Positions 12,346 to 53,260 of a stretch of DNA of 64,000 nucleotides are shown piece by piece. Below the pieces are notes generated by a model. The model made no database searches, was not told where the DNA came from, and saw only the letters and a program-made list of their open reading frames with translations. Source of the stretch: Podarcis erhardii (lineage: Eukaryota); assembly GCA_964252035.1 (NCBI GenBank), contig OZ176207.1. The stretch is one strand, 5' to 3'. How positions within the stretch are numbered: the stretch's first letter is position 1; each line of letters starts with the position of its first letter. The translations under genes were made by a program, and so were the position numbers.

Positions 12346-12503
12346 NNNNNNNNNNNNNNNNNNNNNNNNNNNNNNNNNNNNNNNNNNNNNNNNNNNNNNN
12401 NNNNNNNNNNNNNNNNNNNNNNNNNNNNNNNNNNNNNNNNNNNNNNNNNNNNNNNNNNNNNNNNNNNNNNNNNNNNNNNNNNNNNNNNNNNNNNNNNNNN
12501 NNN
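12346..12503. other. Assembly gap (N run)
   Basis: Run of N bases. Confidence 1.
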
Positions 12504-17810: not shown

Positions 17811-20246
17811 CCCATCAGAGGGACTCTGCAAAACACTGCCTGCCTGCTCAAAGGCAAGCATGCTTTCTGCTGTAGTGGAATGACTGAAAGGTTTAACAAA
17901 AAAGAATTCGCCCTGTTCAGACATTGGAGAGAGACAAGACTTGTAGTGCTGAGCTCCAGCTCCGCCCACTTCAAGGTATCTGATAAAGCCTTCGGGATGT
18001 GGGCGCCCAGTGAAATTTATGGTGGATTTCCTGTCTGTCCTCTTACTACAGCAGTGTGACATGAACCAGCTGGGGACACAGAGGCCAGATCGGAAGCACC
18101 TGGCCCCCACAATAACCAACATTACACAAGAGACCAGAGAGATGGCCACAAGAGAGATGATAAGGTAGAGAGTTAGGCTGGGGGCTCTGGAAGGTGATTT
18201 GGGGAGAAGGTCCAAGGACTTGGAAAAGTCCTGCACAGCATTATCCTCTGAGGAAATCACAAGAACCAGTGAGGCTGAGAGAGACGGCACTCCATTGTCT
18301 CTTACTTCTATCACCAACCTGTGGGACACCCCAGGCTCCCTCAATGCCCGAACAGCCCGGATCTCTCCTGAGTGGCGTTCCACTTTGAACGGGGTGGCTT
18401 CATTGGCATCCTGAAGCAAACTATAGGACAGCCAAGCATTGTGGCCACTGTCAGCATCCACAGCCACCACTTTGGTCACCAGGAATCCAGGTTCCACCGG
18501 GAGCAGAACTGGCTGGTGAAAGGCAGAGCCCTTGGAGACTTGCGGGTGCACAATCACCGGGGCGTTGTCGTTCTGGTCCACAACAAACAAGTGAAGAGTG
18601 GCTGTGCTGCTCAGGGGTGGGAAACCCGAATCCTTCACCTCCACTGCAACTTGAAAGACTTTCTCTTGCTCATAGTCAAGCATCCTGGATGTGTAAATGC
18701 TGCCATTCTCTTGGTTGATGTGGAAATAGGTCGAAATGGGTAAGCCATGATTTCCATTGTCCAGAATGGAATAAGACAGCTTGGAGTTGACACCTGCATC
18801 CGGATCTGAGGCTGACAGAGAAAAAACTAGAGTCCCAGGGGAAGTATTTTCCTCCACATGGGCAGTGTATGAAGGGATGGAGAAAGTGGGTGCATTGTCA
18901 TTGACATCTGAGACTTGAATAAATATGTTTTTGTGGGTGGATTTTTGAGGCATTCCAGAATCTGTTGCTTTAATTGTGATATTATATCCAGCAGCCTTCT
19001 CTCGGTCCAGGGGCCCATTGGTCACCAGTGAATAATGTCCCTTAAAGGAAGACACCAGTTTGAACGGGATGTGCCTGGTAATCTCCAAGTGGACTTGCCC
19101 ATTTTCCTCAGAGTCGTTGTCCTTTGCTTGGATCAGGGCAATGACTGTTCCTGTGGGTGCATCTTCTTGCACTGGGCTAGAGAGGGAGGTCAGCATAATC
19201 TCTGGGCGGTTGTCATTGACATCAACAAGTTCCACTCTGATGTTGCAGTGACCCTCCATGGCAGGGGACCCCTTGTCTTTTATGTAGATAGCTATCTCGT
19301 AAGCATTGGCTTCTTCATAGTCCAGCAAAGCTTTGGTCCTGATCTCCCCTGTCTGGGGATCCAAGCTAAATAAGTCAAGGAGCTTCAGAGGTGCGCTATT
19401 GCTGGCTTTGAGGAAATACTCCATCTCTCCATTGGGACCTTCATCTAAGTCCGTAACATTGAGCTTAGTTACGACAGTCCCCACCTGGACATTTTCCTCC
19501 AAATAAACTTTGGACACTGGCGGGTCACACACAGGGGGGTTGTCATTTGCATCCAGGACGTGGACTGTCACCTGGGCAGTCCCAGACTGAACAGGATTCC
19601 CACTATCCAGAGCTGTCAGGACTAAGTGATGGACAGCGGCTTTTTCCCTGTCTAGAAGCTTCTCCAGCACAATTTCGGGCATTTTGACCCCGTCCCCCCT
19701 GACGTTAATGCTCAAGGCAAAATGTTCGCTTGGGCTAAGCTCATAGGTGGCAATGGAGTTGGAGCCCGTGTCCGGGTCTTCGGCGGCTTCCAGGCGCAAG
19801 CGGGTGCCCGGGTTGGCCACCTCGGTGATTTCCAAGGAAACCCTGTCCTTCGGGAACTTGGGGGCGTTGTCGTTCACGTCCAGGATCTCCACCTCCACCC
19901 GGTGGAGCTGCAGGGGGTTCTCCAGCACCAGCTGGAGGGGGAAGGAGCACGTGGGGCTGGAGCTGCACAGAGCTTCGCGGTCCAGCCTCTCGTGGACCAG
20001 CAACATGCCGTCGGCGAGGTTGACGTGGAAGTAGTGGCGCATCCCGTCGCTGACCAGCTGCAGGCGGCGAGCGGACAAGCTCCGCACGTCCACGCCTAGG
20101 TCCTTGGCCACGTTCCCCACGGAAGAGCCTGGGTCCCGGTCCTCTGGGATGGAGTAGCGAATCTGCGCGGGGATGAGCCCTGGCAGGGACAAGACGGCAG
20201 CCACCAGCGCCAGCAGCTGCCACGACCAGCTCTGCCCGCCGCCCAT
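17811..20246 (-). CDS. Extra C-type-like protocadherin gamma variable exon X3 (812 codons), the last variable exon
   Basis: Intact cadherin exon; first ATG at 20246 (the track start is TTG). Donor GGG|GTAAGA, phase 0. Confidence 0.92.
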
Positions 20247-20900
20247 GCCTGGCTCCTTTGCGCGCAAGGATGGCCGTCTCCAGCGGCTGCCTCTGCTCCA
20301 GGTATCCAGCCCGGGGGTGGCCGCTGCTGCCTCCGGACCCCGCCGCAGTCCGGTGCCCCCCGCCCCGCCCCCCAGGTCTGCTCCTGGCGGCTCCGGGGTG
20401 ACCTGAGAGGTGCTGTGCAGCGGAAAGGCGCGGGCTGCAGCTGGAGAGGCGGGAGGGGGGGGAGCGGGGGGATTTTAAAGCGCTCGGATCAGCAGCAGCT
20501 CATTGGCAAAAGGAGCAGCAGAGAAAAGGGGCTGTGAAATGGATACAGACAAGCGGCAATTCCCTCCTCGGCGGCGGCGGCGGCAGCAGCAGCAGCAGAG
20601 AAGCCCCTTCCCCGAAACGCACACACACCCTGCTGCTCCCCCCTCCCCAATCTCTCTTGCCACCAGTTTTCCCTCCCTGCGCTTCCCATTCCTTTCCCAG
20701 CGCAGCAGAGAGATTTGGAGGGCTGACCCAAGGGAGCCATTGGCCAGAAGAGCTCCCTTGATGCCCCTTTGGTGGAAAAGCAGGAATCGAAGGTGCAGAA
20801 CGCAGACAGGGCGAGCTGCTGACGGCAGCTGTAACTCCAGGAGGGGGGAGGGGGCTACTCTACCCTCCTGCAACCTCTTCACTTCAATCCCCTCCCCCTC
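19660..20900. promoter_or_regulatory. CpG island over the X3 promoter and EC1-EC2
   Basis: High GC and CpG density; (GCG)/(GCA) repeats at ~20570-20597; CCAAT boxes at 20502 and 20739. Confidence 0.8.
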
Positions 20901-23857: not shown

Positions 23858-24684
23858 CCAAGTCTGGAAGTTGCTACTGTGTGAAAAAGGACCGCGTAAC
23901 CTGCTGTTTTTAACCTAGAGACACCAGGCTAAAAGGCAGACAATGGAAAACAAAGCCCAAAATCTTGTCTGGTTTTGGCTTCTGTGCTAGCTATAGGACT
24001 CTTAGAAGCATACGCTGCAAAGAAATGTTTGCTCTAAAAGCACACTGACTCCTCACGTATTACATCCACAACAGAACAGCTGATTTGTCATTTTTATGAG
24101 CAAAGATAATTCAATGAATTCTAGGAAACAATAGTTCCTCTTACCCCAACCTAAGCTTCCAGATCAATCTCTTTTAGGTATTTCTAGGCTACCAAATTAA
24201 TACTGTATCTAGCTTTATTTACCGGTATTTCAGAAGCCTTAGACTCCACCCTTCCAATGTAAAAACTCAAGGGAGTGATTGGTTTTTCTTAGAGAAAGAA
24301 ATCTAATTGTACGGGGGGGGGGGGAGAGACTTAGCAGTTGCAAAAATACAAAAAGCTAACTTTGTGACAGGCAGCATTTGAGGGATGATTTTAAATTATC
24401 ATTTTCTTATTGTTCACATCCTAGTTCCAGTCCCTGCTCCCCTACCCACTTTCTCTCATTAAAAGGCAGCAATTTGTGGGAAGAAATCAATGTAATTTTC
24501 CCCACTCTCCTGCTCTCTCTTTCCCAAGGCGTTATCACTATTGTGCTGCAGGGTTAAATTATGAAGAAGGAGGCCCCACCCTATTCTGATAACTGATGAA
24601 TCAGCCCTCAGTCAAGTTTCAAAGTGTTACTGGAGACACCAGATTCATGTGGGAAAGGAGAAAAAGGACAAAATGCCACCTCAC

Positions 24685-27135
24685 CTGCCTGGGATGGTTC
24701 AGTGTATCAGTACGAGATAAGAAAGTGTCAAAGTCTCTCGTCAGAGTACTTGGTTGAGGGTAATCCACAGGCCTCATAAAGGTGAAATCACTTCTGTCCG
24801 AGCCGGGAGAATAGCTGGCTCTATAGCACTGGCTCTGGGAGTCTGTGGGCCTGAGTGTGACCTCCATGTATTTCAATGTGCCATCTGAGTTCAGTTGAAG
24901 TTTAGGGCTGGATTGTTTGAAAACATCCCTGGCAGGAGCACTACTCAGGCTGCAGCAAGAAGAACCCCTGGCTTTTTTATTCCGAAAGCATTTTGCAGAC
25001 AGGATTATGAACGTAACGAGGGACACAATGCTAACTGCCACCAGCGCAATAATCAGATAGAGGGTCAGGTCAGATTTTTCTTTGGGGTGAGTCAGGAAAT
25101 CATGAGACTGGGGCCTTTCCTCAGTTACTTTATCCTCCAATGAGACCACAATGGTGACGGTGGTAGACAAAGGTGGTTCTCCATTGTCCTTCACTAGTAC
25201 AAGGATTTTCTGTGCCGGGAGATCTGTTTCCTGGAACTCCCGAACAGTCCAAATTTCCCCAGTGTAGGGAGCCACTCGGAACAAGGAGGGGTCAGTAGAC
25301 TGGGAAAGCAAGGAGTAAGAAAGCCAGGCATTGTGGCCCGAGTCTGCATCCACGGCAGTGACTTTGGTGACCACGTAGCCTGCCGATGCAGACTGAGGGA
25401 TCCTCTGGATTGCAGACAGTTCCCGACCAGTCACTGGGTGCAAAACAACAGGCGTGTTATCATTCTGATCCATTATGAAGAGGTAGACAGTGACACTGGA
25501 GCTCAGTTGGGGTGACCCAGCATCATGCACCATGATGGGGATTTGCAGCACCTGCAGCATTTCATAGTCAAAAGAGTGCTGGGCATAGACATTCCCATTG
25601 TCTGGGTTGACGTAAATGAAAGAAGAGACTGGAGCATCTTGAATTGGGCTTCCTGCCACTGAGTACATGAGCCGGGAATTGTCCCCCTCGTCAGGATCAG
25701 AGGCCGCCACAGTGCATAGCAGAGAGCCAGGTGGATTGTTCTCCTTCAAGAAGGAGTTGTAGAAGGGCTGAGAGAAGTACGGGGCATTGTCATTAACATC
25801 TGAAATGTTCAGCATGATGGTGACATCTGTGGTTAGAGGTGGGGACCCTGAATCTTGGGCCATCAACTTGATAGTGTATCGAGAAACTGTTTCTCTATCC
25901 AGCTTCTCAGTGGTAATCAAAGAATAGTGGTTTTCAAAAGATTTAATTTTAAAGGGCAAGTTGGGTGATATTTGTAAGCTCACCTTTCCATTGGCACCTG
26001 AATCTTGGTCTCGCACATTGAAAAGCCCTACCACTGTCTCTAAAGGGGTGTTTTCTGGCACGGGGTTTACCAGAGAGGTAAGGAGAACCTCTGGAGGGTG
26101 GTCGTTCTCATCTTCAACTTCCATTTGGATTACACAATGGCCTTCCATTTGAGGAATGCCCTTGTCCCTGGCCCTTACATGAAGCTCATAAAAATGAGAT
26201 TCTTCGAAATCCACAACTCCTTGGACACGGATCTCACCTGTGTGGGGATCCAAGCCAAACAACTTCTGGATGGAATCAGGTGTGTGGATTCCAAAGGAAT
26301 ACTGTATTTCCCCATTAGAACCTGCATCAGGGTCAGTTGCATTAAGTCTGAAAAGCAAAGAGCCTACAGGGATGTTCTCCAAAAATCTTATCTTGTACAA
26401 AGGAAGGTCAAATGCAGGCTCATTATCATTATTATCCAGGACCACAATGGTGATCAGAGCTGTTCCTGACAGTACAGGATCCCCCCCATCACAGGCAGTC
26501 AGGATGAGCTGGTGTTCCGATTGTTGCTCTCGGTCCAAAGGTTGCTCTAGCACCAGCTCAGGTAAAAGCTTGCCATCGTTCACATTCTTTACATTAAGTG
26601 AGAAGTGGGGGTTGGGGCTGAGTCGGTAGACACTGACTGCATTGGTCCCCACGTCCGCATCATGAGCGCTCTCCAGTGGAAAGCGAGACCCTGTGGCGGC
26701 AGACTCTGCTATCCTCAGCACAAGCTTGGGGGTGAGGAAACCGGGGGAATTGTCATTTAAGTCCAGGATCTCTACCTCCAGGTGAAAGAGCTCCAAGGGA
26801 TTTTCTATGACTACTTGGACTGGCAAAATGCACCCCGAGCTTGCTCCACACAGGGTCTCTCGGTCTATCTTTTCATTCACTATCAGAGCACCGTTGGCCA
26901 AGTTAACTGCAAAGTACCTCTTGCTCTCCTCAGAGCCCAGCCTCAGCCTGCGACGGGAAAGGTCTGCCACCGTTAAGCCCAAGTCCTGAGCCACCTTTCC
27001 CACCACGGTGCCCAGCTCCGATTCCTCCACCACGGAATAGTGGATCTGTCCTGTAACCAACGCCCGGCTGAACAGCAAAAACAAACCCAGTACTTGCCAT
27101 TTGAAAGAGGGTTGCCAGGACAAATGTGGCTCCAT
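24685..27135 (-). CDS. PCDHGC5: Protocadherin gamma C5 variable exon (817 codons)
   Basis: C5-specific YSVVEESE, RLGSEE, EGHCVIQ, TVVGLFNVRD, GSLLCTVAASDPD, and tail KQSSPKLQLNSDGTLKYMEVTLRPTDSQSQCY. Donor CAG|GTGAGG. Confidence 0.96.
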
Positions 27136-28663
27136 TTCAGAAAAAAGTCCCCTTCCAGAAGGAGTCTTTGTGATATCCCAGGGATAAGGAGGCTCCAGGA
27201 CCTGGACGAATGCTGTTTTTTAAATCCCTCGGTATTTCCTTCCAAATGAGTTAAAGTAGCTTTTGAGCTTGCCTAGCTGCAGCAACAGAATGTTAGTCAG
27301 AGAGTTGAGGGGGTGGATTGGGGGAGGGAAGCTGAATTACAGCCATAGCGACGGAGGAGGAAAGTCAAGGCAGAAAGAGCTGATCCCCCCTCCCCCCAAA
27401 ATCTGGATCAGCACCTGACTAGATGACAGCTCCATCCACTCTCCACCAGTGACAAGTCCACCTACACTCTTAAAGCTGCTGCAGCACATGAAGTTGGGAG
27501 ACCAGGACTGATCACCCCCATACCTCAACCCTAAATGTAACCAAGAGGCTGGTTTGCCACTGGTTTTGGCAGCTAAGTTTAGCAGCTCAGATTCTTGTTC
27601 TCAAGGAAACAGCACGTCCGGGAAGCATGAACGGTACAAATCCTCATTGTTCACATTAGCTAGATTCATTCCATCTCATCTGAACAAAAGACAAACTCTC
27701 AGCTGTAGGGGATACAGAATCATAGTCTCTCTGGCGAACAACTGGTCTGATTTTTCACTTGCAGTGAAAAAGGTATTTGTTACAGTCGAAAAGAGGAAAG
27801 ATAGGGAGAAACTCTCACAGAAAGTGCTTTAGCATTTTGCAACGCAGCTTCAATAAATGCATTTAAAACTCTTAGTCATTACCAAGGCAAAACAGACCCT
27901 TTCAGAATGTTCATTTTCAAATGCAGACATGGGAACCTCCACCACACAGTGAAGAATGCACAATCTTCAAAATTGCTTAAGGCCTCCCAGCTCTATTCAT
28001 TGGCCTTTCCAAAATTAGAACACCACAATCAATGCAGCAGTATTTCTAAGTAGAACCATTGTAACCCAAAGACCATGGTGTGGCTTTGAATGTCAGGGAC
28101 CCACATACCAAGTAGTTTTTAAGCTGTGGTGTTAAGGCACTTTCCAATAATGCGACACCCAAGTACAGATTCACAGAACTGTGATGGACTCAGTGAGTGG
28201 ACCATTTTTCTTAAGATGGGGTGCCTCATTCTTGATGCACCCCCGACTTATGATCCTTAGCACTTTTTCTTTCCCCTCTTTCCACCAAGCTTTCAAAAAC
28301 ATCAGAAAAACAAATATTTGACAACCTCCCCTGGAAAATCATTTAACTGCTGGATTTATTTTTCGGTTAGAAACTTTTTGCTGCTTGTTAATCTAAATCT
28401 AAGTACCAGTAGTTTAAAAGCATTACTTCTTGCCAAATATCCACAGGGTGAACAACTGCTAATCTTCCCAAGCTTCTTCTAAAATAGCCTATCTCCTTGA
28501 AGAATCTAAAATCCAACAAAATGCTTTTTAATTTACAAACTGACCACCTTAATACAAAGGCTGCCTGACATTGCCATTGCATCTGTGACCTTATCTCTGG
28601 AGATTGTTACAGAATCACAGGGTGCTACATGACATAGTTATAGAACAGTATTTCATGCCTCAC

Positions 28664-31108
28664 CTCGTTTGGCTCTTGGGAAAGGCTGCAGGCCGGAAGT
28701 GTGCCTGTGCTGTTGATATCCTGCTGAGTGACTGGTGTAGCTATCCTGAAATTCCTCCCTACTGAAAAGTGGGTCTGGCCAGGCCTTAGGAGGGTAAAAG
28801 GAGAAACAACATCTCCCCCAATGAAGGCTGTAGGGAATTCCATTTTTTCCTCCTGGCTCAAGCGTACTGAGAACGTGTCAAAGTGTCCTCCCACAGGAAT
28901 AGAGTTCCTACCCTTCAGGTCGCTGGTCCAACCCACATCTGAGTGTCTTCCTTTCAATCTTTTAAGACACTTCATAGATAAAAACACAAAGGCTAGAGCA
29001 GAAAGTCCTGAGATTGTGATTAGAGCAATAATGAGTTGCAAGGTCAGGTGAGATAGCCCTTCTTGTTCCATGCTGGACTCTCTGAGGTCTGCTGTGCCCA
29101 ACTCATGCTCATGCTCTAGATTAAGAATCAGAGTGGCTGTGGCAGACAGAGGTGGCTTCCCATTGTCCAAGATCTCAACAACCAACTCTTGGGAAGGGGC
29201 GTCTTGTTCCAGGAGGGCTCGGACGGTTCGGATCTCTCCTGTGAACGCCGAGACTTGGAAAAGGCTTGGGTCTGTGGCTTGCAGCAACTTATAAGAAACC
29301 CATGCATTCTGCCCAGAGTCTGCATCCACAGCTGTGACTTTGGTTACCAGGTAACCTCCTTGTGCAGAAAAAGGGACTGGCTGCTGGGCTAGGACCCCCT
29401 TCTTGGTTACAGGGTATACAACGAGAGGAGCATTATCATTCTGGTCTATGATGAAGATGGAGACAGTCACGTTGGCACAGAGTGGAGGAGAACCATTATC
29501 CTTAGCTTGAATCTGGAAAACCAGTTGCTGGGTTTGCTCATAGTCAAATGAGCAGCCACTGTAGATAGTACCGTTCTCCATAACATAGACATAGGAGGAA
29601 ATGGGCATTCCATTTACGATATGCTCCACTAACGAATAAGACAGGTGTGAGTTCTGCCCCAGATCAGGGTCAAAGGCAGATATAGAAATGATTGGCAGCC
29701 CCAGAGCATTGTTCTCAGCTACGAGGGTCTCATATGCAGGCTGTGAGAAGTGGGGTGGGTTATCGTTCAGGTCAGATATATTTATAAGGAAGTTTCTTTG
29801 ACTGGAGAGAGGTGGAGAACCAGAATCCGTAGCTGTGATCATAACTTTGTACTGTGAGATTTCCTCCCGATCTAGGGGGCCACTGGTGATCAAAGAGTAG
29901 TGGTTCTTGAAGGAAGGTACAATCTGGAAGGGGACATCTGCAGGGAGATGAAGCTGTACCTCTCCATTTTCCCCAGAATCTGCATCACTGACTCTGAGGA
30001 GCCCTGCTGTGGTACCTGGGGGAGCATCTTCTGGTATGGTGGTGGTGAGGGAAGTGAACCTAATGATAGGCTCATTGTCATTCACATCCACTACCTCCAC
30101 TAAGATGTTGCAGTGTGCATCCATGGAAGGTGACCCTTGGTCTTTGGCCCTCACATCAATTTCATACAATGTGTCATCTTCGTAATCCACACTTCCCAGG
30201 ACTCTTATCTCCCCGGTCTCCTCATTAAGGCTGAACATTTTCCGGATTTTCTGTGGAGTGTGGTTGCTGAAGGAGTAGGAAACTTTCCCATTTGCCCCCT
30301 CATCATTGTCTGTAGCTTGTAAATGTATCACAAGGGCCCCCACTGGGGCATTTTCTAGAAGGCTAACTTTGTACACCGACTGGTTAAAGACAGGTGGATT
30401 GTCATTGGCGTCTATGACTGACACGAGAATCTTTGCTGTCCCGGATTTAGCAGGAACTCCTCCATCCAGGGCTGTAAGCACCAGTGGGTAGCGCTGCTGT
30501 TGTTCTCTATCCAGCGCCTTTTCTAACACCAGCTCAGGTTTGCTGCCACCTTTATGTGACTTAACACTGAGGCTGAATTGTCCACGTGGACTCAGCTGGT
30601 AGGTGCTGACTGAATTCATGCCAATATCCAAATCTTCAGCACTTTCCAGGGGGAAGCGGGCCCCTGGCATTGCAGACTCTGCTATCTCCAAATGGGTGAG
30701 ACTGGTAAGAAAAACTGGGTCGTTGTCATTCACATCCAAGAGCTCAACTTCCACACGATGGGAGGCTGTTGGGTTTGCAAGTAGGAGCTCCAGATAGAGC
30801 AGGCAGTGTAAGCTGGGTCCACAAAGCTGCTCTCGGTCCAGCCGTTCTTTCACGACCAAGACACCATTTGGCACCTTGGCTTCGAAGTACTTTTCAGCAG
30901 AGCCAGCCATGATCTGCAGCTGTCGGGAGACCACCCGAGCAGCATCTAGACCCAAGTCTTTAGCCACATCCCCAACAAAGGCCCCAGGAGCTAACTCCTC
31001 AGGAATTGAATAATGGAGCTGGTCTCCAGCACACTGGAGAGAGACAGAAACCAAAAGCAAAGCTCTTACTTGCCATGGCAGGAGTAGTCTTTCTTCCAGA
31101 GACAGCAT
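28664..31108 (-). CDS. Extra C-type-like protocadherin gamma variable exon X1 (815 codons)
   Basis: Intact signal peptide, EC1-6, TM and tail. Donor GAG|GTGAGG, phase 0. Lacks the diagnostic EC1 and tail motifs of C3, C4 and C5. Confidence 0.9.
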
Positions 31109-31254
31109 AATGTCGCCAAAATTTCCTCTTCCTTTGCTGGACCTCTATCCTCTCTGATTCCAGCACAGCCAAGGAAACGACACAGAATCCTGGGTTAGAT
31201 CGCGCAAGGGATGAGAAAGCGGCGCACCATCTGCATCTTTTCTCTGTTTTTCTT

Positions 31255-31285
31255 CCACAGAAAACAGCGGCGGTGCCTAGTCCGT
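31255..31285 (-). promoter_or_regulatory. CSE-like element upstream of exon X1
   Basis: Minus strand GACTAGGCACCGCCGCTGTTTTC keeps the GCCGCTGTT core and the upstream GACT of the other two CSEs; ~155 bp from the ATG. Confidence 0.6.
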
Positions 31286-31799
31286 ATCGGAATCAAGAGG
31301 GGAGGAGCTTTGTTGTCCATCAAAGCAGATACAGGGCTCCTGGAATCAAGGAAGCGCCTGGCTGTTTGCAATGGACCACCCATTCTCCCCCTCCCCAGCT
31401 TCAGCAATGGTGTGGGGGAGGTCTTAAAGCGCCAGTGCAAATGTTGAAGAAGAGCTGGGAGCCCACTTGCCAGCTGTCAGTGACTGGATTTCCCAAGATA
31501 ATTATATGAACAATAAATCCTATGTCATTACAAGCTTTTGAATTCATTAATGAATGTCACAAGCATTTAAATTCAATAATGAACACTCTTTGTTTGGAAT
31601 GGTTGGGGTTATAAGCTAAACCAGCAAACTGCATATTTTGCAGATTTTTTTTAAAAAAACCAGAATGCAACAAATACCAGTGGCTGCACAATTGATATAC
31701 TGCCATTTGCTGGATATAAGATCACGTTAAAAGACCCATTGATTGTCTGCCTGAATTTCCTTTAAATGAATGGCATTCCATAACCGGTGCAGGAGAGCT

Positions 31800-33460
31800 C
31801 TTCAAAGCTCATTCCCACTATGGCCTTTGTTCTCCAAATGGAGTATACTAAGAGTCTCTCCATATTTCCTTTCCTAAATTTCAGGAGTTTTGCAGCCAGT
31901 GCACAAAACAGAATAAACCATGACATCACAAAGGAAATTTTTAAGCCTCTGGAGTCAAAGGTTAGGAGGAGCAAGGTTAAAAAGAGTTTTATGAGCAAGA
32001 ACCTGGTCCCTGAGGTTCCCAACAAACAGCTTCCATAGTGGAGACAACTAAGATAATAGTTAGGGAAGGGGTCAGGTCAAGAAGATTCATGGACTTCCTG
32101 GAAAAGATGAAAGAAATCTATGAATAGAAGTATTTTCTCTCCCCTAAAGGTAGACAATGCCTTCTGAATGTTGTCATGGTGGACTTCAGTGAAGAGGTAG
32201 ATGAGGCACACTGCTGTTGAAAAAGTGGTGTCCTCTGTCTTATGTGCATTAGAAGCACCTGGATTTGCTCCTAGTGGCATCATGTGAGGATGAGAAGCTG
32301 GGCACCTCCTGTGTGTGAGATTTCACAGTAGAAATGAAACAGACAGAATGTATTTACGGTGATGGTTCTTCTCCAGGAGTACTGTGCAGATAATATAGGG
32401 CAATGATCACAGGTTGTTCGTATTGCATTTGTTATTCTGTTAGCTAGATTGGTCTTCACTGTCCAGAGGAGTATTTGTGACTAAAACCTGGTTTTGAAAC
32501 ATGGCCCATGGCTTTAAACACAGGCATCTGGGAATACTGGCAATCACTGCTGCTCCACTGCCTCTGGAGTGAGCTGCTTGCTATGTGCAGAGACATGCTC
32601 TCTGGCATGGACAAAGTTTGTTTTGACCAAGGTACAATCTTTTGGGTATTTGGGGACATAAAAAATGTGCACCACCATATGTTCCATGGCAAAGACGCCC
32701 ACCTCATTTTAACATTAAACTTATAGCTTCTATTTTATAGGCAAGCCTCCTTTTCACCACAGCTGTGACTTCCCAATAGTCACATAATGCCACAGCTGGA
32801 GTATAGTTGCATCGGGTGGAGTCCCCCTATATACGGAATTGCCATACTAAGTAAGGTGTTGCTCCAATATAGAGCTTTCAGGACCAAGCAATGCTCAACT
32901 TCCTTAATTCCCGGTCAATGTTTTCCAAAGAAGCAAGTTCAGATCTCTTCACATCAACAGAAAAGAAAGTCTTAACAAGTAAGTGATGATGGAACTGCTG
33001 CTTGTTCTACTAACCAAGGAATGTTAATTTCTCTGATTCTAAATATCTCTCTGTGTCACAGGCCCTGGAGAGGGTAGGAATCGTCAACACCTGCATTTCC
33101 AACTTCTGCCTGATACATTTCCATGGATCTTACATCCATCTTGACTCCATGAAGGAGCTTGGCTCACATGTACACAGGGACTCACGGTTTACAGGTTCCT
33201 TTCAAAGCAGTAAAAATCTATTTCCACAGTTATCATCTCACTAATCAACTATTATATAGCAGTTGTTTGGGGATGCAATTTCCCGTTCTTTGCTATGATT
33301 TCTATGTAACCTAAACTCACCCTTCTAGTCCACTTGGACTAGTGATGGTCAGGGATTGGCACAGTGCCTGGGCAGAGAGCGCAGAACAATTAGCAGCATC
33401 CACAAAACTCCTGCAGGGTGGAAGCACCTTGAGATTCTGGACTCAGGCTACATCAAGAGC
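31800..33460 (-). pseudogene. PCDHGC4: Decayed PCDHGC4 orthologue (pseudo-exon)
   Basis: Collinear minus-strand remnants resembling human gamma-C4: NRESLC (33172-33192), EMYQAEV (33101-33121; human EMYRAEV), DVKRS/EL..LE..DRE (32908-32955; human DVKKRSDG..PELLLEKPLDRE), AMEH (~32680), PES and an SG..IPD-like segment, FQNQ/LVTNTPLDSEDQSS (32440-32499; human FRNQFSLVTAGPLDREAKSS), and a TM-like ISFV..F.AL.AKLL (~31880-31945). Lies between C3 and C5. Many stops and frameshifts. Confidence 0.75.
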
Positions 33461-34049
33461 AATTTTCTTCAGCTCAAGAGTTTGTATTTGTATATTACAA
33501 CACCAAAAATCACAATATCAAATACATTCCTTGACTTACTGATTCTGCCTTTTCTAATGCCTGAGGATACACATTAAAAAAAACTTAAGGATACTATTGT
33601 TTATAATGAATGTTGTTATCTTGATAATACCAATGTCTTTATACACTCTTGCTTATCTTGAATTCACCTGCACATAACATTCAACTTTGCAATCCTATTT
33701 ATTTTCAGAATCCATTTAGTCGCAAATAGCACGCATACTGTACAGATATTTCTAACTAGTTATATACAGTCTTGGTTCACAGAGCTACGAACGCTGCATA
33801 GCAAGCTAAGTGGCTTTGAAAGATGCAAAGCCACTTGGCTTGGTTTAACTAACACACATGAATTATACTACAGGACACTGTGCTAAACTTCACAGGAAAC
33901 AGTATTTGATGAGAAGCATTCAAATCAGTTCCTAATGCACACTTGTGCCATTTAACTTAATGGAATGGAAAAGAAATTCTGTATTCTAAACCCTTGTCTT
34001 TAATGAAATCACAATAAATATTTGGTGCAAAGGAAAACATTTCAACAAT

Positions 34050-34720
34050 AGAAATAGGAGACCTTGTAATTAGGATTTGAGAAGAGTGGGGAGACTGATA
34101 TCTCACTTCAAAATCTGAAATGTGATTGAGTTTGATTGCTTTAGACTTTTTGGACAGTCAATGACTATTTTCTAGGTTCAAGATTGTAGACAAGCAAGCA
34201 AGAGGGAAATTTGAAATGTTGGGGGTCAACATACAGTAAGTTTCATTACATTCTCCCATCCCCCTACACTAAACTTGTTTGTGAAAGGCACCATAAGATC
34301 TTGAGTGGGGTCTCTGGGCAGGGATTGTGTATGTTTATTGCTGTCAAATCTCATCCAGTGGCAGATGGCTAGACAGCATGATGTTAGCCAGCTCTTTCCA
34401 CTCTTTGTCTTCCATTATCTTTACAGAAAAACAAATATGGTAACATTCTTGCATTGCTCTAGATTAGATGTATCTAATCATAAAGTTTCTGATCTTGGAT
34501 TCTCCTGTGTTGCTTTGGCTGCATATATGCTCATCTTAATTTTCAAAGTGAGATTTCTTCTTTCCAATCTCAACATCCTATAATTTAGGGATACTTGTTA
34601 CAAACTAGAAGACCAGTGTGTTTGGCAATAAACCCCACAGCATATGAAGCTGTCGCTTGCATTTATTTCAGTGCACAAAGCGCAGCAGGTCCTGGACCCT
34701 TGCAACATATTTTCAAGCAC
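34050..34720 (-). pseudogene. Very old protocadherin variable-exon relic (EC1-EC3), subtype unresolved
   Basis: Collinear minus-strand fragments: FSVK..KEL (~34405-34440), a GCCACTGGATG ALDG-like piece, VYxxxLENS (34163-34195), and IKLN followed by a SDFE-like piece (ATDLDEG equivalent; 34110-34136). Many indels; read by eye. Confidence 0.5.
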
Positions 34721-35361
34721 ATATGATTTTAATAAGTACAGCCTCCTCAACTGAAAATGTAATGGACACACTAAATGTTCACGTTGTTTCAGTAATACGT
34801 GAAGGAGCCCTGATTATATTTGGTGAGAGTCTGCCCTGGTTTTGCATATTTTAGAGCCAGATGGCCTACTAATGAAAAGCCTCTGTGCATCATTCTAACT
34901 TTTGTTAAAAAACACTAAAGAAACTAATGGTTCTGCCTGTACAGATTAAGTGTGGGATCTGGTGCAGCTTTAAGAGTACATCAGCTTAGGGTCATCATAT
35001 TGTGCTGGAATTGCTAATGCCTATTGACAGGACACACACGGACACACAAACACACCTCTCTTCCGCTGTCTCTTTTGCCCGCCCCATTTTCTGATCATAG
35101 TCATTTTCTTAACAATCTCCCAGACTATGTAATTTTGGGTAGGAAAACGTAGCTAAAACAATTTCCAAGGATCTCAGGGTTCACATGTCAACCATTTCAA
35201 GCAAAGCAACATGTATGGCAGTTAAGAAAGCCTAATTATGAATTGATAACAGCAATGCAACCCTTTTGGCAAAGAATAGTAATAATAAACAATAATAATT
35301 TAAATCTCAACAACAAATTAAAAGTACAGATGAAATCACTAATCAGTTATTGATGAATTAA

Positions 35362-35363
<2 letters not shown>

Positions 35364-35399
<36 letters not shown>

Positions 35400-35400
35400 C
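35364..35400. repeat. (CAT)n microsatellite
   Basis: Direct reading. Confidence 0.95.
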
Positions 35401-38112
35401 ATTTATAAGGCTGCCCTATAGCAGTTTTCTGGGTGGCTCACAAACCAAACCAAGCAGTAAAATACAGCATATTAAAAACCTATGATGAATTAACTAAAAG
35501 TTGATGCACAATTTACAACTCAAGGTATAAAATAAAAGCAAGCTACATACAAAATATCAATTACTGTTGTGAATGTGTATATATATTTCCCACACAGCTG
35601 AAAGGTTAGGTACCACATTGCTCTAAAACATGTTCGGATATCAGATGCCAAATACTAAATGCCAAATTAACCAGGTACAAAGACTCAAAACCAGTTCACT
35701 GAAATGATGGCCCTGAAAGCTATTCACAAACTATCAGGGGTGAGAACTGGCCTGGAGCCAGACGCTTTCTGGCAACCTCTCCTTTACTCTTGCAATCTCT
35801 GGGCTTCCTGGTCCTTCTTCCAGCACCCTCTCCACATAAAGCTGCAGTTTATCACTGTACCCTAAAACAACTTCATGCCTATAGCATCTAATTGTGTAGC
35901 AGAATGCACCCTGAGCACTGAACACTGCAGATTCAAACTGGTGCAGCAATCATTCCCTAGGAATTGTGCTTCCGGCTCAGTTCTCAATGAGGTTGTACAC
36001 CTGAGTCTGGGCTGTACCACTTCAGACTGCAAGTGGGGACTCAAGATGGCTGTATGCTCCTCCATGCCAGCCACCCCATGGTTAGGATCCATCTTCCTGA
36101 CATCTAGCTTTGACAGAGCTCTGAATTCTTTGTACGCAGGAACATTCAAAGATGTGGGTTTCATCTGCAATCTGAAATGGTACAGCCTAGAAACAGATTA
36201 ACCATCTTGGTGAGAACTGGGCCTTTGTGAGGAAATCTTACAAACAAGACACACAACGTGCTCTCTTCAGAGTGAAAATGTTCATGAATATTTCAAAGGA
36301 AACTAGCATGTACATATAATCCCAGCAATTAACATATTCACTGCCAGCCTTCTGCTGTTACACAATAACAAGATAAAATGAGTGTCACACAAGTGCTACC
36401 TAATGTTATCAGTGATCAGAATATGAGAGGAGCCTGGGAATGAAGGGAATTTGATGCCTCCTAGGCAGTTTGCCTATGCCTGGTATTTTAGGGGGGGAGA
36501 CTGTTGGACAGAATGGGGATGGGGTGCAAGACAACAACATTTAAGTCAGGCTGAAAGTAGCCTGCCACTTGTGATTGCCAAAAGAAAGCTGAAGCCTGAA
36601 ACTTTAGGTAAAACCTTGAGAATCAGAAACCCTAAAGCACAATAGCTTTGTGCAGCTGGTGGAAGAGTCAGGAAAAAGCTTACCTATGTAGGTGTTGACC
36701 AGTGTGCTTTGTAGGCACTGTGAGAAAGAACCTGGCTATTGTTGTTGTTATTTCTGCTCCTCCTCCTCCTCTCTACACAGTAGCTTTTCTGGATTGCAGG
36801 CAAAATCTCTAGTTAATGTTCACTTTCATACAATAACATATTGCATTATCTTTTCACTTATTGACTATAGATATGAACTCTATGATGGGGCTGCCTATGT
36901 TTTCCTGGACATTCAACAGGGAACACATTATCTTAGTATCGTAGCATCTCTGCTATCTCCCACCTGATCAGGGACAACATGGAGGGGGGGAGCTGAGCCC
37001 CTCCAATTAAGCAGGGGGCTGGGCCCCCTCAATATTCTGCGGCCTGCAAGCTATCTGAAGGCAATCCTGTATAGGGAAGGGAGGTTTTTGTGTTTTTATA
37101 TATGTTGGAAGCTGCCCAGAGTGGCTGGGGCAACATTTTGCACTTGCTATAGGGTGGGGTATTCTTTACCATCTACCCAGACTTACTGTGTAATAATATT
37201 TACAGAAAATAACTTATAGTGAGTACCTGATCTTAGACCAACTCACCACAGGAAAGATGCATCCTGTTTTGTAGAAAGAACAGATTGGCTAAATAACAGA
37301 AATTCCAAGGACTAGAAAATGAAACAAGCAGGGCAGAAAAGTGCACTGGATGGAAGAGGGAAATGGCAGCTCTTTAAGACACCAGTTATTCTATAGCCTG
37401 GTGTCCAAACAACTTACTCATCAATCACAGCTCTGACGTCACTCATTTGCTAAAAACACTGAAAGGGGGGGATAGCTGGGCTGGCTCACTCCCTCACTTA
37501 GAAGGGTACTCACACATTTTGCTTGATAACTTCATTTCTAGAAGGGCTAGGCGCTTACATTTTTTAAATGAAAACTCAAAGTCTGGGTCCTCTGACAAGC
37601 ATAGGCCCCAGAGCAATATCCGCAACCCCCTCAATTTCTTAAAATAACAAGCACAGGGCCCTTCATTGGGAACAGAAGCACCAAACCAAGTGGCAACAGC
37701 TGCCACCTTCTCCAACAGTCCCAGGGCCTCTGGGCCTCACTTCAACATAGTGGTGCTATATTGGGGCCCAGAAGCACTGAGGGGAAATGAAAACGTCATT
37801 TCTCAGTATCAGGGCAAGGGAGCACCATCTCTCCTCATCACCCCCATGCTGCTGCCCATCCTTGCCTCCACCTGCTGCGGCCTCCAGATAAACTAATTTG
37901 GGGGTGCACACCTGGTGGCTGGTCCTGTGTGTAGGCCTCCTTCTGAAAGGCATCCATGCTCAGGCTCTTTCCCAGAAGTCTCTTTTGTATAGAAGAGCAT
38001 CTTCCATGGAAGGCTGCTGCCATTGCTTCCATAGAAAGTGCCATTTCCCCCTACCAAATTAGTCTGAATGAGAAGCCATCAGAGCCCTGTTCTAATGTCT
38101 CTTCTTCTGCTA

Positions 38113-38154
38113 CTACTCCTACTCCTACTCCTACTCCTACCCCTACTCCTACTC
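38113..38154. repeat. (CTACTC)n hexamer repeat
   Basis: Direct reading. Confidence 0.9.
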
Positions 38155-38750
38155 ATGTTTGGCTACATAGAGAATAGGTTCAATTCCACCATACACATAA
38201 GGAAAAGGAATAAGTCTTACATTTCCATCCCATCATAGATGAATATCAAACAGACATACATCAGAAGCTAGGCCCCCAAGGAAATGTTGAAGGTGATCTC
38301 CCTTTAGCGTCTTGAAGAAGCACCCAAGCCAAAAGGCCTCCCAATACACATCCAACCCATTATTTACACAGCATTACTGTTTCCTTACATATGATTTTTC
38401 GTAAAACATAAACTTACTGGGAACTATCATTCTTCAGAGGCAATGACTATGCAACCCAATGACAGCTGACCACATTGATCTGACCCAGAGCAGAAAGAAC
38501 AAACCACCCAACTCCATGTAATGTAGGAAGGAAACAACACATGCACAGGAGTTAAACAGGCGGGGCGCTTAATCATGCTATTAAATGACACAGCACTAGA
38601 TGGAGACAGAAAACAGGAAAAAGAATGTGTTCTACAGGAACTACCCTGTTTCCGGGTAGAAAGACATTGAGTGGTCTGCCTTTAAGTCAACTTAAGCTCA
38701 GAGCTGGGATTTCCCAACTTTGTTGGAGAAGGACAACAAGCATACATTAC

Positions 38751-41195
38751 CTCAGAGGACACCAGAAGCCTCTTATTTGTGCTTATTAGCTGGTTATATA
38801 TTGCAGGGTCACATCTTGTGATAGTACTCTGGCGGCTCCCCATAGGGCTGGGAGCAAAGGGCATTTTGTACAGAAGTTCACTCTGGCGAGAGTCCGTGGT
38901 GAGGACCTGCTGGTAGAAGTTTGGAGGAGTAAATCCACTCCGCACAGTGTCTATGTGGTTGAAAGGCCCCGGGGTTCTATAAAGGGAGCTTCTGGAGGCT
39001 TTGAATATATCCTTGGATTGCCTCCACTTGTAAAATTTATAAATCCCCACCCCAACCACGGTGACAAAGAAGGCCACTGAGATCAAGATGACAGCAATGA
39101 TTAAATAGAAAGTCAAGTGCTTCTTTGTTTGGGGTGTGGTGGACACAGCAGTCAAGTCTGTCAGTGTCTCCCTAGATGTCTCTGCTACATCTACAGCAAG
39201 GGTCACTGTGGAGGACAAGGCAGGCTCCCCATTGTCTTTTATTAAGATGAGCAATGTTTGCTTGCGAGAATCTTCCTCTTGCAGAGAACGAGCTGTGCTT
39301 ATCTCCCCAGAATGCAGCCCCACAGTGAACAGCCCTGGGTCAGTGACCTGAAGGAAGGAATACGAGAGCCAGGCATTGTAACCAGAATCTGCATCCCAGG
39401 CCACAATTTTTGTGACCATGTAACCAGGGCTGACTGTGGGTGAGATGACTTCTGAGAGCGAAGAACTGTTGTTTGAGTTTGGGTATAAGAGCCTGGGTGC
39501 ATTGTCATTCTGATCTGTGACAAAAACATTGACAGTGATGTTAGTGGCGAGAGGCGGGAGGCCAGCATCACGAACCTGGACCACTAGCCTGAACTCCATG
39601 GTGCCCTCATGGTCCAAGGGGACTAGGACATATATGCTGCCATTTTCCCGGTTAATAGAAAAATACCTGCCCGCCAAGTCTCCCGAGGACATGGGACTAT
39701 CCAGGATGGAGTAGGAAAGGTGGGAATTCCGGTTCAGATCCGGGTCAGAGGCACTGATGTTAAAGATCAGGGCCCCTGGAAGGTTGTTTTCCTCCACATA
39801 CACATCATAGGAGGATTGTGGAAATTTAGGAGGGTTGTCATTTACATCAGATACTTTAACCAGTATTTGCTTTTCTGCCATGAGTGAGGGTGTGCCTGCA
39901 TCCTGAGCTGTGATGGTGATGTTGTACTCAGAGACAAGTTCCCTGTCCAAGGGTCCTTTGGTCTGTAAGGTATAATAGTTTTTAAGGGAAGAGCTGAGGG
40001 CAAAAGGGATCCCAGAAGGTATAAAGCAATTTACTAGGCCATTATCACCAGAGTCCTGATCCGTGACACTCAGCAACGCAATCACAGTCCCTGGAGCAGC
40101 GTCTTCTGGTATTGGGCTGTACACCGACGTCACTGTTATTTCTGGGGTGTTGTCGTTCACATCCACAATCTCTACCAGCACTTTGCAATGAGCGACACCA
40201 GGATTTGAACCCTTATCTTTTGCCTGGATATAAATCTCATAAAATTTGGCTTCTTCAAAATCCAGCAACCCCTTCAGCCTCAGTTCTCCAGTGGCAGAGT
40301 CTAGGGCAAAGAGCTGTCGGACTCTGGCAGGGGTGTGACTGCTGAAAGAGTACACAATCTCCCCATTGGGGCCTTCATCCAGGTCGAAAGCGCTGGTTTG
40401 GACAACCAGGGTGTTCAAGGGTGTGTCTTCTTTCACGCTGGCTCTGTAGATGGACTGGTTGAAGACAGGAGCGTTGTCATTTGCATCCAGGACGTCAACC
40501 AGCACCTGCAAGCTGGCCGATCGGGGTGGGGTCCCTCCATCCATCGCCGTGAGAACCAGCTGCACTTCCCGCTGCTGCTCCCGGTCCAGCTCTTTCTCCA
40601 GCACCAGCTCCGCATACTTCGTCCCGTCGCCTCGCGTCTGCACGTCCAGCACGAAGTGCGGGTTGGCGCTGAGCTGGTAGGTCTGCAGAGAGTTGCTTCC
40701 CACGTCGGGGTCCTGCGCGCTCTCCAAGGGGAAACGCGCTCCGGGGATCACCGACTCGCTGATCTCCAGCTTCATTTGCTTGCTCTGGAAAGCCGGGTCG
40801 TTGTCGTTGACGTCCTGGATCTCCACGGTCACGCCGTACAGCACCAGCGGGCTCTCGGCCACCACCTCCAGGCTCAGCGCGCACGGCGAGAGGGCCCCGC
40901 AAAGTTCCTCGCGGTCGATGCGCTCGCTCACCAGCAACTTCCCGCTGCCCAGGTCCACCTCGAAGTACTTTCGTCCGCCGCCCGACACCACGCGGAGGTT
41001 CCTGGCGGGCAGCTGGGCGAGATCCAGGCCCAGGTCGCCCACCACGTTGCCCACCGAAGAGCCCCTGGGCATCTCCTCGGGGATGGCGTAGCGCGTGGCG
41101 GCCAGCGCCCGCTCCGAGACGCCCAGCCACAGCCAGAAGCCCACGACTGGCAGCCATCGCGCTCTCGGCCGGCTCCTTCCCGCGGCGCCTCTCAT
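38751..41195 (-). CDS. PCDHGC3: Protocadherin gamma C3 variable exon (815 codons)
   Basis: Gamma-C3-specific stretches: AHCKVLVEIVDVNDNTPEITVTSVYSP, SSSLKNYY, QSSYDVYVEENNLPGA, and cytoplasmic YKWRQSKD..SSLYRTPGP..TTDSRQS..SRQST..CDP. First ATG at 41195 (the track start is TTG). Donor GAG|GTAATG. Confidence 0.95.
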
Positions 41196-41950
41196 CTCCC
41201 GGCCTCGCAAAGTTTCTTTCTTTTTGCGGGGGCGGCGGCGAGGTCCCTCTAAAAGTTTTCAGCCGTCCCTTCCATGCGGCCGCGACCCTGCCCGCTCCAG
41301 GCTCGCCTCGCGCGGACTTGGGGGCTCGGGCATTGCTCGGCGGCGCGGCGCTCCGGCGGCGGGACTGCGCTCCGTCTGTTGCTGGCGCTCAACTCGCGGC
41401 GGCGGCGGCGGCGGCGGCGTCCCACTTCGCGCTGCTTCGCCGCCAGCATCGCCGGGTCAACAGCGGCGCGCAGAGTCGCGACCATTAACTGCAGGAGAGG
41501 CCGCTCCCGCTCCGCCTCCCCGGCTCGCCGCCGGGACTCCGAGGCACGAGGCGCACGGCACCATCCAAGCGGGGCCGGCGGGGCCCGGTGGACTTCTTTT
41601 TTCGGGGGGGGCGGGGGTGTTCCTCGGTGAAAGGCTTGTGGAGGCTGCCCCCTAGGCTGCACAGCCCTCCCCGCTCTGCCGCCGCGAGAGGGGGCGAAGG
41701 GAAGCGCGGACCAAGGAGGCAGCAAGGGCTCATTGTTCTCGCTGGGGAGCGTGGAGGAAGGGCTGGACCCCGGACGCTTCCCAGGGATCGGGAGAGAGAT
41801 GCCCGCCCGCCTGCCTCCGGTGCCTCCGCCTCTGGCTCCCTCGCTTACGCTCTCCCGGCGTGGCGGCTCTGTGGGGCAGCCCAGTGCTCCCCATGCACAG
41901 CACTGCTCAGGGAGAACCCGCAAGCCCCCCAAGGCGGTGGAAGCTTCCCC
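40430..41950. promoter_or_regulatory. CpG island over the PCDHGC3 promoter and EC1-EC2
   Basis: Very high GC and CpG density, including a (GCG)n run at ~41397-41418. Composition changes sharply near 40430. Confidence 0.85.
41455..41495 (-). promoter_or_regulatory. CSE/CTCF site of the PCDHGC3 promoter
   Basis: Minus strand CCTGCAGTTAATGGTCGCGACTCTGCGCGCCGCTGTTGACC aligns with the 55931-55975 element; ~260 bp upstream of the ATG. Confidence 0.85.
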
Positions 41951-52655: not shown

Positions 52656-53260
52656 TGTGACAGTATTCTTTTCACACACACACCCTGCAACAAATAAGAC
52701 AAGGTATTTAAAATCAACACAAAGTAAAACTGATTTGTAGCTAAATATTATTAAGTTGGTTGCGCTTGTAATAAAGTCTAGGAACACTATGCTAAACCCA
52801 GAACTGCAGTATAACATCTGATCAGTAGAGGGCAGACATAACCCAAGAAATCTGTACCAAAGAAGAAATTACATTATTGCGATAGAATGATTGTCCTGTT
52901 ACCTTTGAAGAATAAAGGGACAATTCTGACATTGTTAAATGTCTTATTGGGTCCATTACCCTCAGATCTAAAGGAAAGTTCAAGCTTACCAGGTTCCATG
53001 AAAATATCTCACTTTATGGAAACATCCATACCTTATAGGTGCAGAAGACTACTGTATATTCTATGCCAAGATACCACCTTTTGCTTATATAGTTCATCAG
53101 GGTTCCCTAAAAAAGAAGGATCTTAACTAAACAGTGTTCGAAATGTAGCTGAAAAGTGGGTGCCACCAAACGGCTTTTCTTCATTCTGAACAAGCAGGTT
53201 AGAAAACAGAAATATTACAGCCTTGCAGTCTAGGTCTTAAAATGTATCTGTGATTCTCAC

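What the first reader, a model, noticed from the sequence alone, without database searches (positions are those of the whole stretch)
31800..33460. PCDHGC4, the essential clustered protocadherin in mouse, appears to be a long-dead pseudogene here
Seen: no intact C4 exon lies between C3 and C5. Instead, collinear, frameshifted minus-strand remnants keep C4-like motifs: EMYQAEV (33101-33121), DVKRS..EL..LE..DRE (32908-32955), FQNQ..LVTNTPLDSE (32455-32499) and a C4-like TM segment. The ORF track does not show it. Established: mouse genetics single out gamma-C4 as the isoform needed for neuronal survival and postnatal viability, and biallelic human PCDHGC4 variants cause a neurodevelopmental disorder. 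Inference: this lineage lost C4 long ago, so the survival function moved to another isoform (X1, X2, X3 or C5) or is a mammalian innovation. Human motifs were recalled from memory, and I cannot say whether this loss is already reported for lizards.
Basis: partly seen in the sequence, partly recalled or inferred. Interest (0 to 1): 0.85.

Follow-up and report, generated by a model that had tools for sequence, protein, structure and literature searches.

The report
Dead protocadherin gamma-C4 exon in lizard
Between the gamma-C3 exon and the next intact exon of this lizard's protocadherin cluster lies the decayed, frameshifted remnant of gamma-C4, the one gamma isoform that mouse neurons need to survive; a better-preserved dead copy sits in the same slot in a sea turtle.

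Summary
On the minus strand, 33210-32854 and 32725-32443 read as the EC1-EC2 and EC3-EC4 parts of a protocadherin variable exon, with 11 frameshifts and one stop. A frameshift-aware alignment to yak gamma-C4 scores 89. The best of 142 real non-coding windows scores 69, and the best of 150 shuffles scores 63.

The relic carries two motifs, EMY.AE and F.NQ..LVT (the second one residue short). A reading that favours no paralog is 40-42% identical to C4 and 30-34% identical to C3, C5, X1, X2 and X3.

An orthologous relic in Elgaria shares two out-of-frame indels with this one. A sea turtle has an unmistakable dead C4 in the same C3-X1 slot: 54% identity, 13 frameshifts, 3 stops.

None of the five intact C-type exons here is a C4 orthologue. 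A search of 5.8 billion protein clusters listed intact C4 only from mammals.

The claimed transmembrane piece is not supported.

Jiang et al. 2009 already reported that the anole has no direct orthologue of human gamma-C4. The physical relic, and with it the evidence that C4 predates the mammal-reptile split, appears to be new. What this means for neuronal survival is untested.

The parts
32854..33210 (-). Dead gamma-C4, segment 1: end of EC1 through EC2 (yak C4 aa 84-220). It reads LL*KEPVNRESLC.., MEMYQAEVGNAGVDDSYP, FFSVDVKRSELASLENIDRE and EHCLVLKAL.
   Evidence: Frameshift-aware alignment: score 89, 42% identity over 115 codons, 8 frameshifts, 1 stop. Nulls reached at most 69 (real DNA) and 63 (shuffles). 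A paralog-neutral profile chose the same frames. The DNA aligns with the Elgaria relic, the turtle dead C4 and yak C4.
32443..32725 (-). Dead gamma-C4, segment 2: end of EC3 through EC4 (yak C4 aa 316-420). It ends in FQNQV-LVTNTPLDSEDQSS.
   Evidence: Score 53 against 33 antisense; 35% identity over 93 codons, 3 frameshifts. tblastn with yak C4 gave E 0.15. nhmmer hit at 32454-32485. The motif F.NQ..LVT occurs only in C4 among the 437 proteins held; the relic's copy is one residue short. Only 129 nt separate segments 1 and 2 where 288 nt are expected, so about 160 nt of EC3 are deleted.
32244..32275 (-). Weak EC5-like remnant.
   Evidence: nhmmer matched HMM positions 1565-1596 with E 3.8. 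Elgaria has a hit to HMM 1567-1651 at the same distance from the X1 start: about 1135 and 1159 nt. Not significant by itself.
31800..32243 (-). No supported homology.
   Evidence: Frameshift-aware scores of 32-49 for five paralogs against 30-41 antisense, which is within the null range.
38682..41210 (-). Intact gamma-C3 variable exon, the upstream neighbour.
   Evidence: 61% identity to yak C3. Tree.
28625..31108 (-). Intact X1 exon (anole gamma-c4 in the naming of Jiang 2009), the downstream neighbour. It is not a C4 orthologue.
   Evidence: 49% identity to yak C4. Orthologues at 77-98% in squamates, 68-73% in turtles and 57% in coelacanth. It forms its own clade.
31110..31640 (-). Conserved X1 promoter block. 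It marks the 3' limit of the slot that holds the relic.
   Evidence: blastn: 71% identity to gecko and 74% to skink.

Best explanation
The stretch at about 33210-32443 (minus strand) is a unitary pseudogene: what remains of the variable exon of protocadherin gamma-C4. It lies in the ancestral slot between gamma-C3 and the next C-type exon, X1.

Shown:
- It has no open frame. There are at least 11 frameshifts, one stop, a deletion of about 160 nt in EC3, and no recognisable start, EC6, TM or cytoplasmic part.
- It therefore cannot encode a protocadherin, even if it were transcribed and spliced to the constant exons.
- The exon was already broken in the common ancestor of lacertids and anguimorphs.

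Inferred:
- C4 existed in the amniote ancestor as the sister paralog of C5 and was kept in mammals.
- It decayed in squamates and turtles. Whether that was one loss or several is open.
- This lizard builds its gamma-C repertoire from C3, X1, C5, X2 and X3.
For: - Significance in this window.
- Across species: nhmmer with an exon model on the C3-X1 interval of six squamates gave 8 weak hits. All 8 were on the sense strand, 1.1-2.6 kb upstream of the X1 start. 147 kb of control DNA gave 6 hits over both strands. That predicts about 1.1 hits per strand; by my own arithmetic the Poisson p is about 3e-5.
- The Elgaria relic reads LEMYQAEM...FFSVDVK... and shares a 29-nt deletion and a 16-nt insertion with the window relic.
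- C4 identity: EMY.AE and F.NQ..LVT occur only in the four mammalian C4 proteins among the 437 held, plus the turtle dead C4 for the first motif.
- The neutral reading is 42/40% identical to C4 against 30-34% for the other paralogs.
- Trees.
- The turtle dead C4 in the same slot scores 1117 against 566-674 for other paralogs, and its clade support with mammalian C4 is 100.
- No intact orthologue: yak C4 is at most 49% identical to any lizard exon. The database search lists C4 only from placentals and a wallaby, and identity then drops to 50% or less.
- There is no assembly gap in 31109-38681.
Against: - Each single hit in this window is weak by standard tools.
- Turtle C5 scores 87 on segment 1, nearly as high as yak C4's 89.
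- AU tests do not reject placing the relic with C5 (p 0.20) or X3 (p 0.17).
- Without the turtle row, and after realignment, the relic falls inside the C4+C5 clade but nearer C5.
- The relic and the turtle dead C4 are both long branches.
- The 3' third of the exon is not detectable.
- Gecko, Sceloporus and Pogona show no signal.
- Only this 64-kb window of the genome was read, so a C4 copy elsewhere is excluded only indirectly, through annotated squamate proteins.
Confidence: 0.85

Rival explanations
1. The relic is real but descends from another C-type paralog. Candidates are an old C5 duplicate, an X3-like exon, or an ancestral c-type lineage such as coelacanth gamma-21 that is not orthologous to mammalian C4.
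For: All paralogs align to the same DNA at equivalent positions. Turtle C5 scores 87 and lizard X3 scores 74, against 89 for yak C4. AU tests give p 0.20 for C5 and 0.17 for X3. Jiang 2009 infers several ancestral c-type paralogs followed by differential loss.
Against: The relic carries two motifs found only in C4. C4 is the best match in both segments of a paralog-neutral reading, and also in the Elgaria relic: 36/86 against 27-30/86. The relics plus the C4 clade have SH-aLRT 97. A turtle has an unambiguous dead C4 in exactly this slot.
Confidence: 0.1
2. There is no relic. The motifs are chance similarities picked out of 64 kb read in six frames.
For: tblastn with the window's own exons, the protein HMM (E 0.37) and Pfam find nothing significant.
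Against: The score of 89 exceeds all 292 null alignments. Collinear hits on the sense strand only appear at the same place in three other squamates. Lacertid, Elgaria, turtle and yak share a DNA block, TTGGAAATGTACC.AGCAGA, and the two lizards share indels.
Confidence: 0.02
3. The relic is a dead duplicate, and a working C4 persists elsewhere in this genome, outside the window or in unassembled sequence.
For: Only 64 kb were examined. Clustered protocadherin exons duplicate often.
Against: C-type exons rarely duplicate (Jiang 2009). The C4 search returned no squamate protein above 50% identity, although several annotated lizard proteomes are in the database. The five other squamates examined show the same C3-X1-C5-X2-X3 order, or X1-C5-X2-X3 where C3 lay beyond the fetched flank, with no extra exon.
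Confidence: 0.03

Closest known systems
Mammalian PCDHGC4 / Pcdhgc4 variable exon (yak locus L006:17590-20127; mouse EC1-4 structure 7JGZ)
   Same: It sits just downstream of C3. The EC domains come in the same order. It has the C4-only motifs LEMYRAEV and FRNQFSLVT. The surviving 150-200 codons are about 40% identical.
   Different: The lizard copy has no reading frame (at least 11 frameshifts and a stop). It has lost about 160 nt of EC3 and everything recognisable from EC5/6 onward. In mammals the exon is intact, highly conserved (97-98% among placentals, 88% to wallaby) and essential (PMC6957209).
Dead gamma-C4 of the sea turtle Lepidochelys kempii
   Same: It occupies the same slot between C3 and X1, is on the same strand, and is also frameshifted.
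   Different: It is far better preserved: 525 codons, 54% identical to yak C4, 13 frameshifts, 3 stops, plus a match to the C4-specific cytoplasmic tail. No lesion shared with the lizard relic could be shown.
Anole gamma-c subgroup (Ac-gamma-c3 to c7) of Jiang et al. 2009, PLoS One 4:e7614
   Same: There are five intact C-type exons in the same order. C3 and C5 are orthologous to the human genes and the other three have no human orthologue. The paper states that human gamma-c4 has no direct orthologue and explains this by differential loss.
   Different: The text of that paper does not describe a C4 remnant. Its 14 pseudogenes appear only in a figure that I could not read. My scan found no relic signal in the two iguanians tested, Sceloporus and Pogona.
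The younger dead variable exon in this same window (57070-58755, minus strand)
   Same: It is also a frameshifted protocadherin variable exon lying between intact exons.
   Different: It is of the alternate (gamma-A/B-like) type and is easily found by ordinary searches: nhmmer E 3e-37, about 480 codons at 37% identity.

Membership tests
Clustered protocadherin variable exon | Tandem cadherin EC repeats with calcium-binding motifs (DRE, DxNDN) in EC1 to EC6 order, on the cluster's coding strand | tested here: met
   EC1-EC2 and EC3-EC4 pieces lie collinear on the minus strand. DRE/DSE and V(D/N)D motifs are readable. Every paralog aligns to the same positions.
Clustered protocadherin variable exon | One uninterrupted exon of about 2.4 kb encoding signal peptide, six EC repeats, TM and a short cytoplasmic part, ending in a splice donor | tested here: not met
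   No ORF is present. There are at least 11 frameshifts and 1 stop. No start, TM or donor was found. It is a relic, not a working member.
PCDHGC4 orthology group | Syntenic slot immediately downstream of gamma-C3 and upstream of gamma-C5 | tested here: met
   The window order is C3 - relic - X1 - C5. The turtle order is C3 - dead C4 - X1 - C5. The yak order is C3 - C4 - C5.
PCDHGC4 orthology group | Groups with C4 rather than with other C-type paralogs | tested here: met
   The neutral reading is 40-42% identical to C4 against 30-34% for the others. The ML tree gives 85/78, and 97 when the Elgaria relic is added. Support is moderate: AU tests do not reject C5 or X3 on this window's relic alone.
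PCDHGC4 orthology group | C4-exclusive sequence motifs | tested here: met
   EMY.AE and F.NQ..LVT occur in 4 of the 437 proteins held, and all four are mammalian C4. The relic has EMYQAE and FQNQV-LVT, the second one residue short.
Unitary pseudogene | Disabling lesions in a gene that is functional in another lineage | tested here: met
   Lesions. Function in mouse and human: PMC6957209 and PMC8553613.
Unitary pseudogene | No intact copy anywhere else in the same genome | tested here: inconclusive
   No intact C4 was found in the window or among database proteins of squamates. The whole genome and the raw reads could not be searched.

The most novel reading that the evidence does not exclude
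Gamma-C4 arose before the mammal-reptile split and died once in the stem of living reptiles and birds. On that reading all sauropsids have lived for roughly 300 million years without the isoform that mammalian neurons cannot survive without. The C4 survival pathway would then either be a synapsid acquisition, or be carried in sauropsids by the extra C-type isoforms (X1, X2, X3) that mammals lost.
Probability: 0.35. Interest if true: 0.75.

Novelty: new member of a known kind. Interest (0 to 1): 0.6.

Why it matters
In mouse, gamma-C4 is the only one of the 22 gamma-protocadherins required for neuronal survival and postnatal life. In humans it is the only PCDHG gene under strong constraint (PMC6957209), and biallelic variants cause a neurodevelopmental syndrome (PMC8553613).

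A physical corpse of C4 in a lizard and a turtle shows that the gene is not a mammalian invention. It was present in the amniote ancestor and later became dispensable in at least two reptile lineages.

This makes an open question testable: is the survival function intrinsic to C4, or can other C-type isoforms supply it? Lizard X1, X2, X3 and C5 become concrete candidates for rescue experiments.

The fact that lizards lack a direct C4 orthologue was published in 2009, before C4's special role was known. This finding therefore refines known work rather than opening a new field.

Tried and rejected
- tblastn with the window's seven exons against the interval found nothing significant. It did reveal the other relic at 57-58.6 kb.
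- A protein HMM of the seven exons on stop-to-stop fragments gave a best E of 0.37.
- Pfam hmmscan of ten fragments gave no hits. The five fragments of the positive-control relic also gave none, so this negative result is uninformative.
- The search of protein representatives with a C-type profile returned only giant multi-cadherin proteins and was of no use.
- Two searches with X1 as the query did not list any mammalian C4. C4 was obtained instead from the yak contig next to a C3 hit.
- The alligator locus L008 held only alternate-type exons and did not reach the C-type region.
- A pigeon exon that looked like a C4/C5 chimera is simply C5, split by an N run.
- The turtle dead-C4 reading used as a query scored lower (64) than yak C4, as expected when two decayed sequences are compared.
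- The TM segment and a possible EC1 start at 34109-33996 do not exceed the antisense or null scores.
- I looked for inactivating lesions shared by turtle and lizard, to decide between one loss and two. None could be established.
- Literature searches for a reported dead C4 in reptiles or birds found nothing beyond Jiang 2009.

Full report
**Setting.** The window holds the 3' end of a protocadherin-gamma cluster on the minus strand. There are seven intact variable exons. The genome is a lacertid lizard: the exon at 28625-31108 is 98% identical to a Podarcis raffonei protein. The only N runs are at 12346-12503 and 60472-60634. Nothing in the C3-X1 interval is hidden in a gap.

**Which exon is which.**
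- Against solved structures, 38682-41210 stands out for mouse Pcdhgc3 EC1-3 with 433 bits.
- 24619-27135 stands out for chains 4ZPN/4ZPO with 464 bits. That these chains are gamma-C5 EC1-3 is my own knowledge.
- Mouse gamma-C4 (7JGZ) scores about the same, 435-468 bits, with all five C-type exons.
- A yak contig gave reference exons for C3, C4 and C5. Yak C3 is 61% identical to the lizard C3, and yak C5 is 62% identical to the lizard C5. Yak C4 reaches only 43-49% with any lizard exon.
In the tree it forms its own clade, apart from C4.

No intact C4 is present here, and X1 is not C4.

**Is there a relic?** Ordinary tools say little.
- tblastn with the window's exons gives nothing on the minus strand of 31800-33460. 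It does find a clear dead exon at 57.1-58.5 kb.
- A protein HMM gives E 0.37 at 32881-33006.
- Pfam gives nothing, but it also misses the positive control.
- A codon-aligned DNA model of the seven exons gives two weak collinear hits on the minus strand, at 32485-32454 and 32275-32244.

The turning point came from running the same model on the C3-X1 interval of six squamates: this window, gecko L001, skink L002, Elgaria L003, Sceloporus L004 and Pogona L005.
- All eight hits lay on the sense strand, 1.1-2.6 kb upstream of the X1 start, roughly in exon order.
- One skink hit had E 0.004 and reads ELLL*KALDGEEEEAGSHLILKSLN, the EC2 'ELVLEKxLDRE..H.L.LTA.DGG' block.
- 147 kb of control DNA gave six hits on both strands together. 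About 1.1 hits per strand were therefore expected, and eight against zero were seen. By my arithmetic the Poisson p is about 3e-5.

**Direct test with C4.** I wrote a frameshift-aware local aligner (BLOSUM62; gap 9/1, frameshift 8, stop -6).
- Yak C4 against 33600-31641 (minus) scores 89. The other nine queries score 43-74 and the antisense strand 40-70.
- 142 real non-coding windows of the same length gave mean 44, sd 9.6, max 69. 150 dinucleotide shuffles gave mean 44, sd 5.5, max 63. Gumbel p is about 1e-3 and 2e-5.
- The alignment covers 33210-32854 and C4 residues 84-220: 115 codons, 42% identical, 8 frameshifts, one stop.
- A second piece, 32725-32443, covers C4 residues 316-420: 93 codons, 35% identical, 3 frameshifts.
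- Only 129 nt lie between the two pieces where 288 nt are expected, so part of EC3 is deleted.
- Downstream of 32443, where the TM segment was claimed, and upstream of 33210, scores do not exceed the antisense strand.

**Is it C4?**
- All paralogs align to the same DNA at the same positions. The frames therefore do not depend on the query. A profile weighting C3, C4, C5, X1, X2 and X3 equally chose the same reading.
- On those 152 codons, identity is 42% and 40% to yak and wallaby C4, and 30-34% to all ten other sequences. C4 is top in each segment separately.
The first motif is also in the turtle dead copy. At these positions the other paralogs have LELFR.EV / LQLHRVEV and F(K/E)NHYSL.T.
- The ML tree puts the relic with the C4 clade (85/78). 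AU tests reject C3 (p 0.007), X1 (0.048) and X2 (0.038), but not C5 (0.20) or X3 (0.17).
- Turtle C5 scores 87 on segment 1. Raw score alone therefore does not settle the subtype.

**Other species.**
- Elgaria has a relic at L003:7808-8089 that reads LEMYQAEM...FFSVDVK...LDRK. C4 is again the best match: 36/86 against 27-30/86. With that relic added, the two relics pair (SH-aLRT 90) and join C4 (SH-aLRT 97).
- The DNA alignment shows the block TTGGAAATGTACC.AGCAGA in lacertid, Elgaria, turtle and yak. The two lizards alone share a 29-nt deletion and a 16-nt insertion. The exon was therefore already broken in their common ancestor. From my own knowledge, that ancestor lived well over 100 million years ago.
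- The sea turtle Lepidochelys kempii has C3, then a relic at L007:3750-5356, then X1, C5, X2 and X3. The relic matches yak C4 over 525 codons at 54% identity, with 13 frameshifts and 3 stops. It scores 1117 against 566-674 for the other paralogs, also matches the C4-specific cytoplasmic tail, and groups with mammalian C4 at support 100.
- C4 and C5 are sister groups, with support 92-97.
- The pigeon goes from C3 straight to C5, with no X1, no C4 and no relic signal.
- A search of 5.8 billion protein clusters with yak C4 lists C4 only from placentals (97-98%) and a wallaby (88%). Identity then drops to 50% or less.

**Literature.**
- Jiang et al. 2009 (PMC2764143) described five anole gamma-c genes. 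They found c3 and c5 orthologous to the human genes, and c4, c6 and c7 without human orthologues. They found no direct orthologue for the human gene, which is printed as 'Hs-gamma-c2'; by context that is evidently c4. They proposed differential loss from a richer ancestral set. The absence of C4 from a lizard is therefore not new.
- I found no paper that describes a C4 remnant in reptiles.
- The statements about mouse and human are correct.

**Verdict.** The TM claim is not supported. The relic is inert. Its value is historical: C4 predates the mammal-reptile split and became dispensable in reptiles. Which isoform, if any, took over its survival role is untested.

Noticed in passing
window 57070-58755 (minus): A second, younger dead variable exon lies between the intact exons at 61573-63951 and 53237-55807. 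nhmmer gives E 3e-37 and 2e-24. About 450-510 codons align at about 37% identity with 14-21 frameshifts. It is closest to the gamma-B-like neighbour.
   Followed up: partly
L007:6454-8882 (Lepidochelys kempii): In this sea-turtle assembly the X1 exon itself carries 4 frameshifts and 4 stops relative to lizard X1. The box turtle protein P0036 is intact. Either X1 is also dying in sea turtles, or these are assembly errors.
   Followed up: partly
L009:15468-27486 (Columba livia): The pigeon has C3, then C5, then X2. No X1 or C4 exon and no detectable relic lies in the 4.8-kb C3-C5 spacer, which contains an N run at 20107-20342.
   Followed up: partly
window 33540-33690 and 34310-35000: Non-coding blocks just upstream of the relic align at 57-70% with skink, Elgaria, Sceloporus and Pogona. 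The 34332-34398 core is shared by all four. They do not align with gecko, turtle, yak or pigeon. They could be a regulatory element or simply slowly decaying spacer; this is unexplained.
   Followed up: partly
window 33996-34109 (minus): A small ORF reads ..RYQSPHSSQ..FAPNIYCDF.. and loosely resembles the EC1 start 'QIRYPVPEE..FVGNVAQDF' of C4. Its score of 31 equals the antisense background, and it lies 700 nt too far upstream.
   Followed up: yes
window 35967-36134 (minus): Both X1 and yak C4 give weak sense-strand tblastn hits (aa 314-362, E about 2-3) far upstream of the relic. This is probably noise.
   Followed up: no
window 31110-31640: The roughly 530 nt upstream of the X1 start codon are the only part of the C3-X1 spacer that blastn aligns to gecko (71%). 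They also align to skink (74%). This fits a conserved X1 promoter.
   Followed up: partly
tool behaviour: Pfam hmmscan returned no family at E up to 10, even for 47-60-residue fragments of the clear relic that score up to 58 bits against a local protocadherin HMM. Blanks from short fragments should not be taken as evidence of absence.
   Followed up: yes
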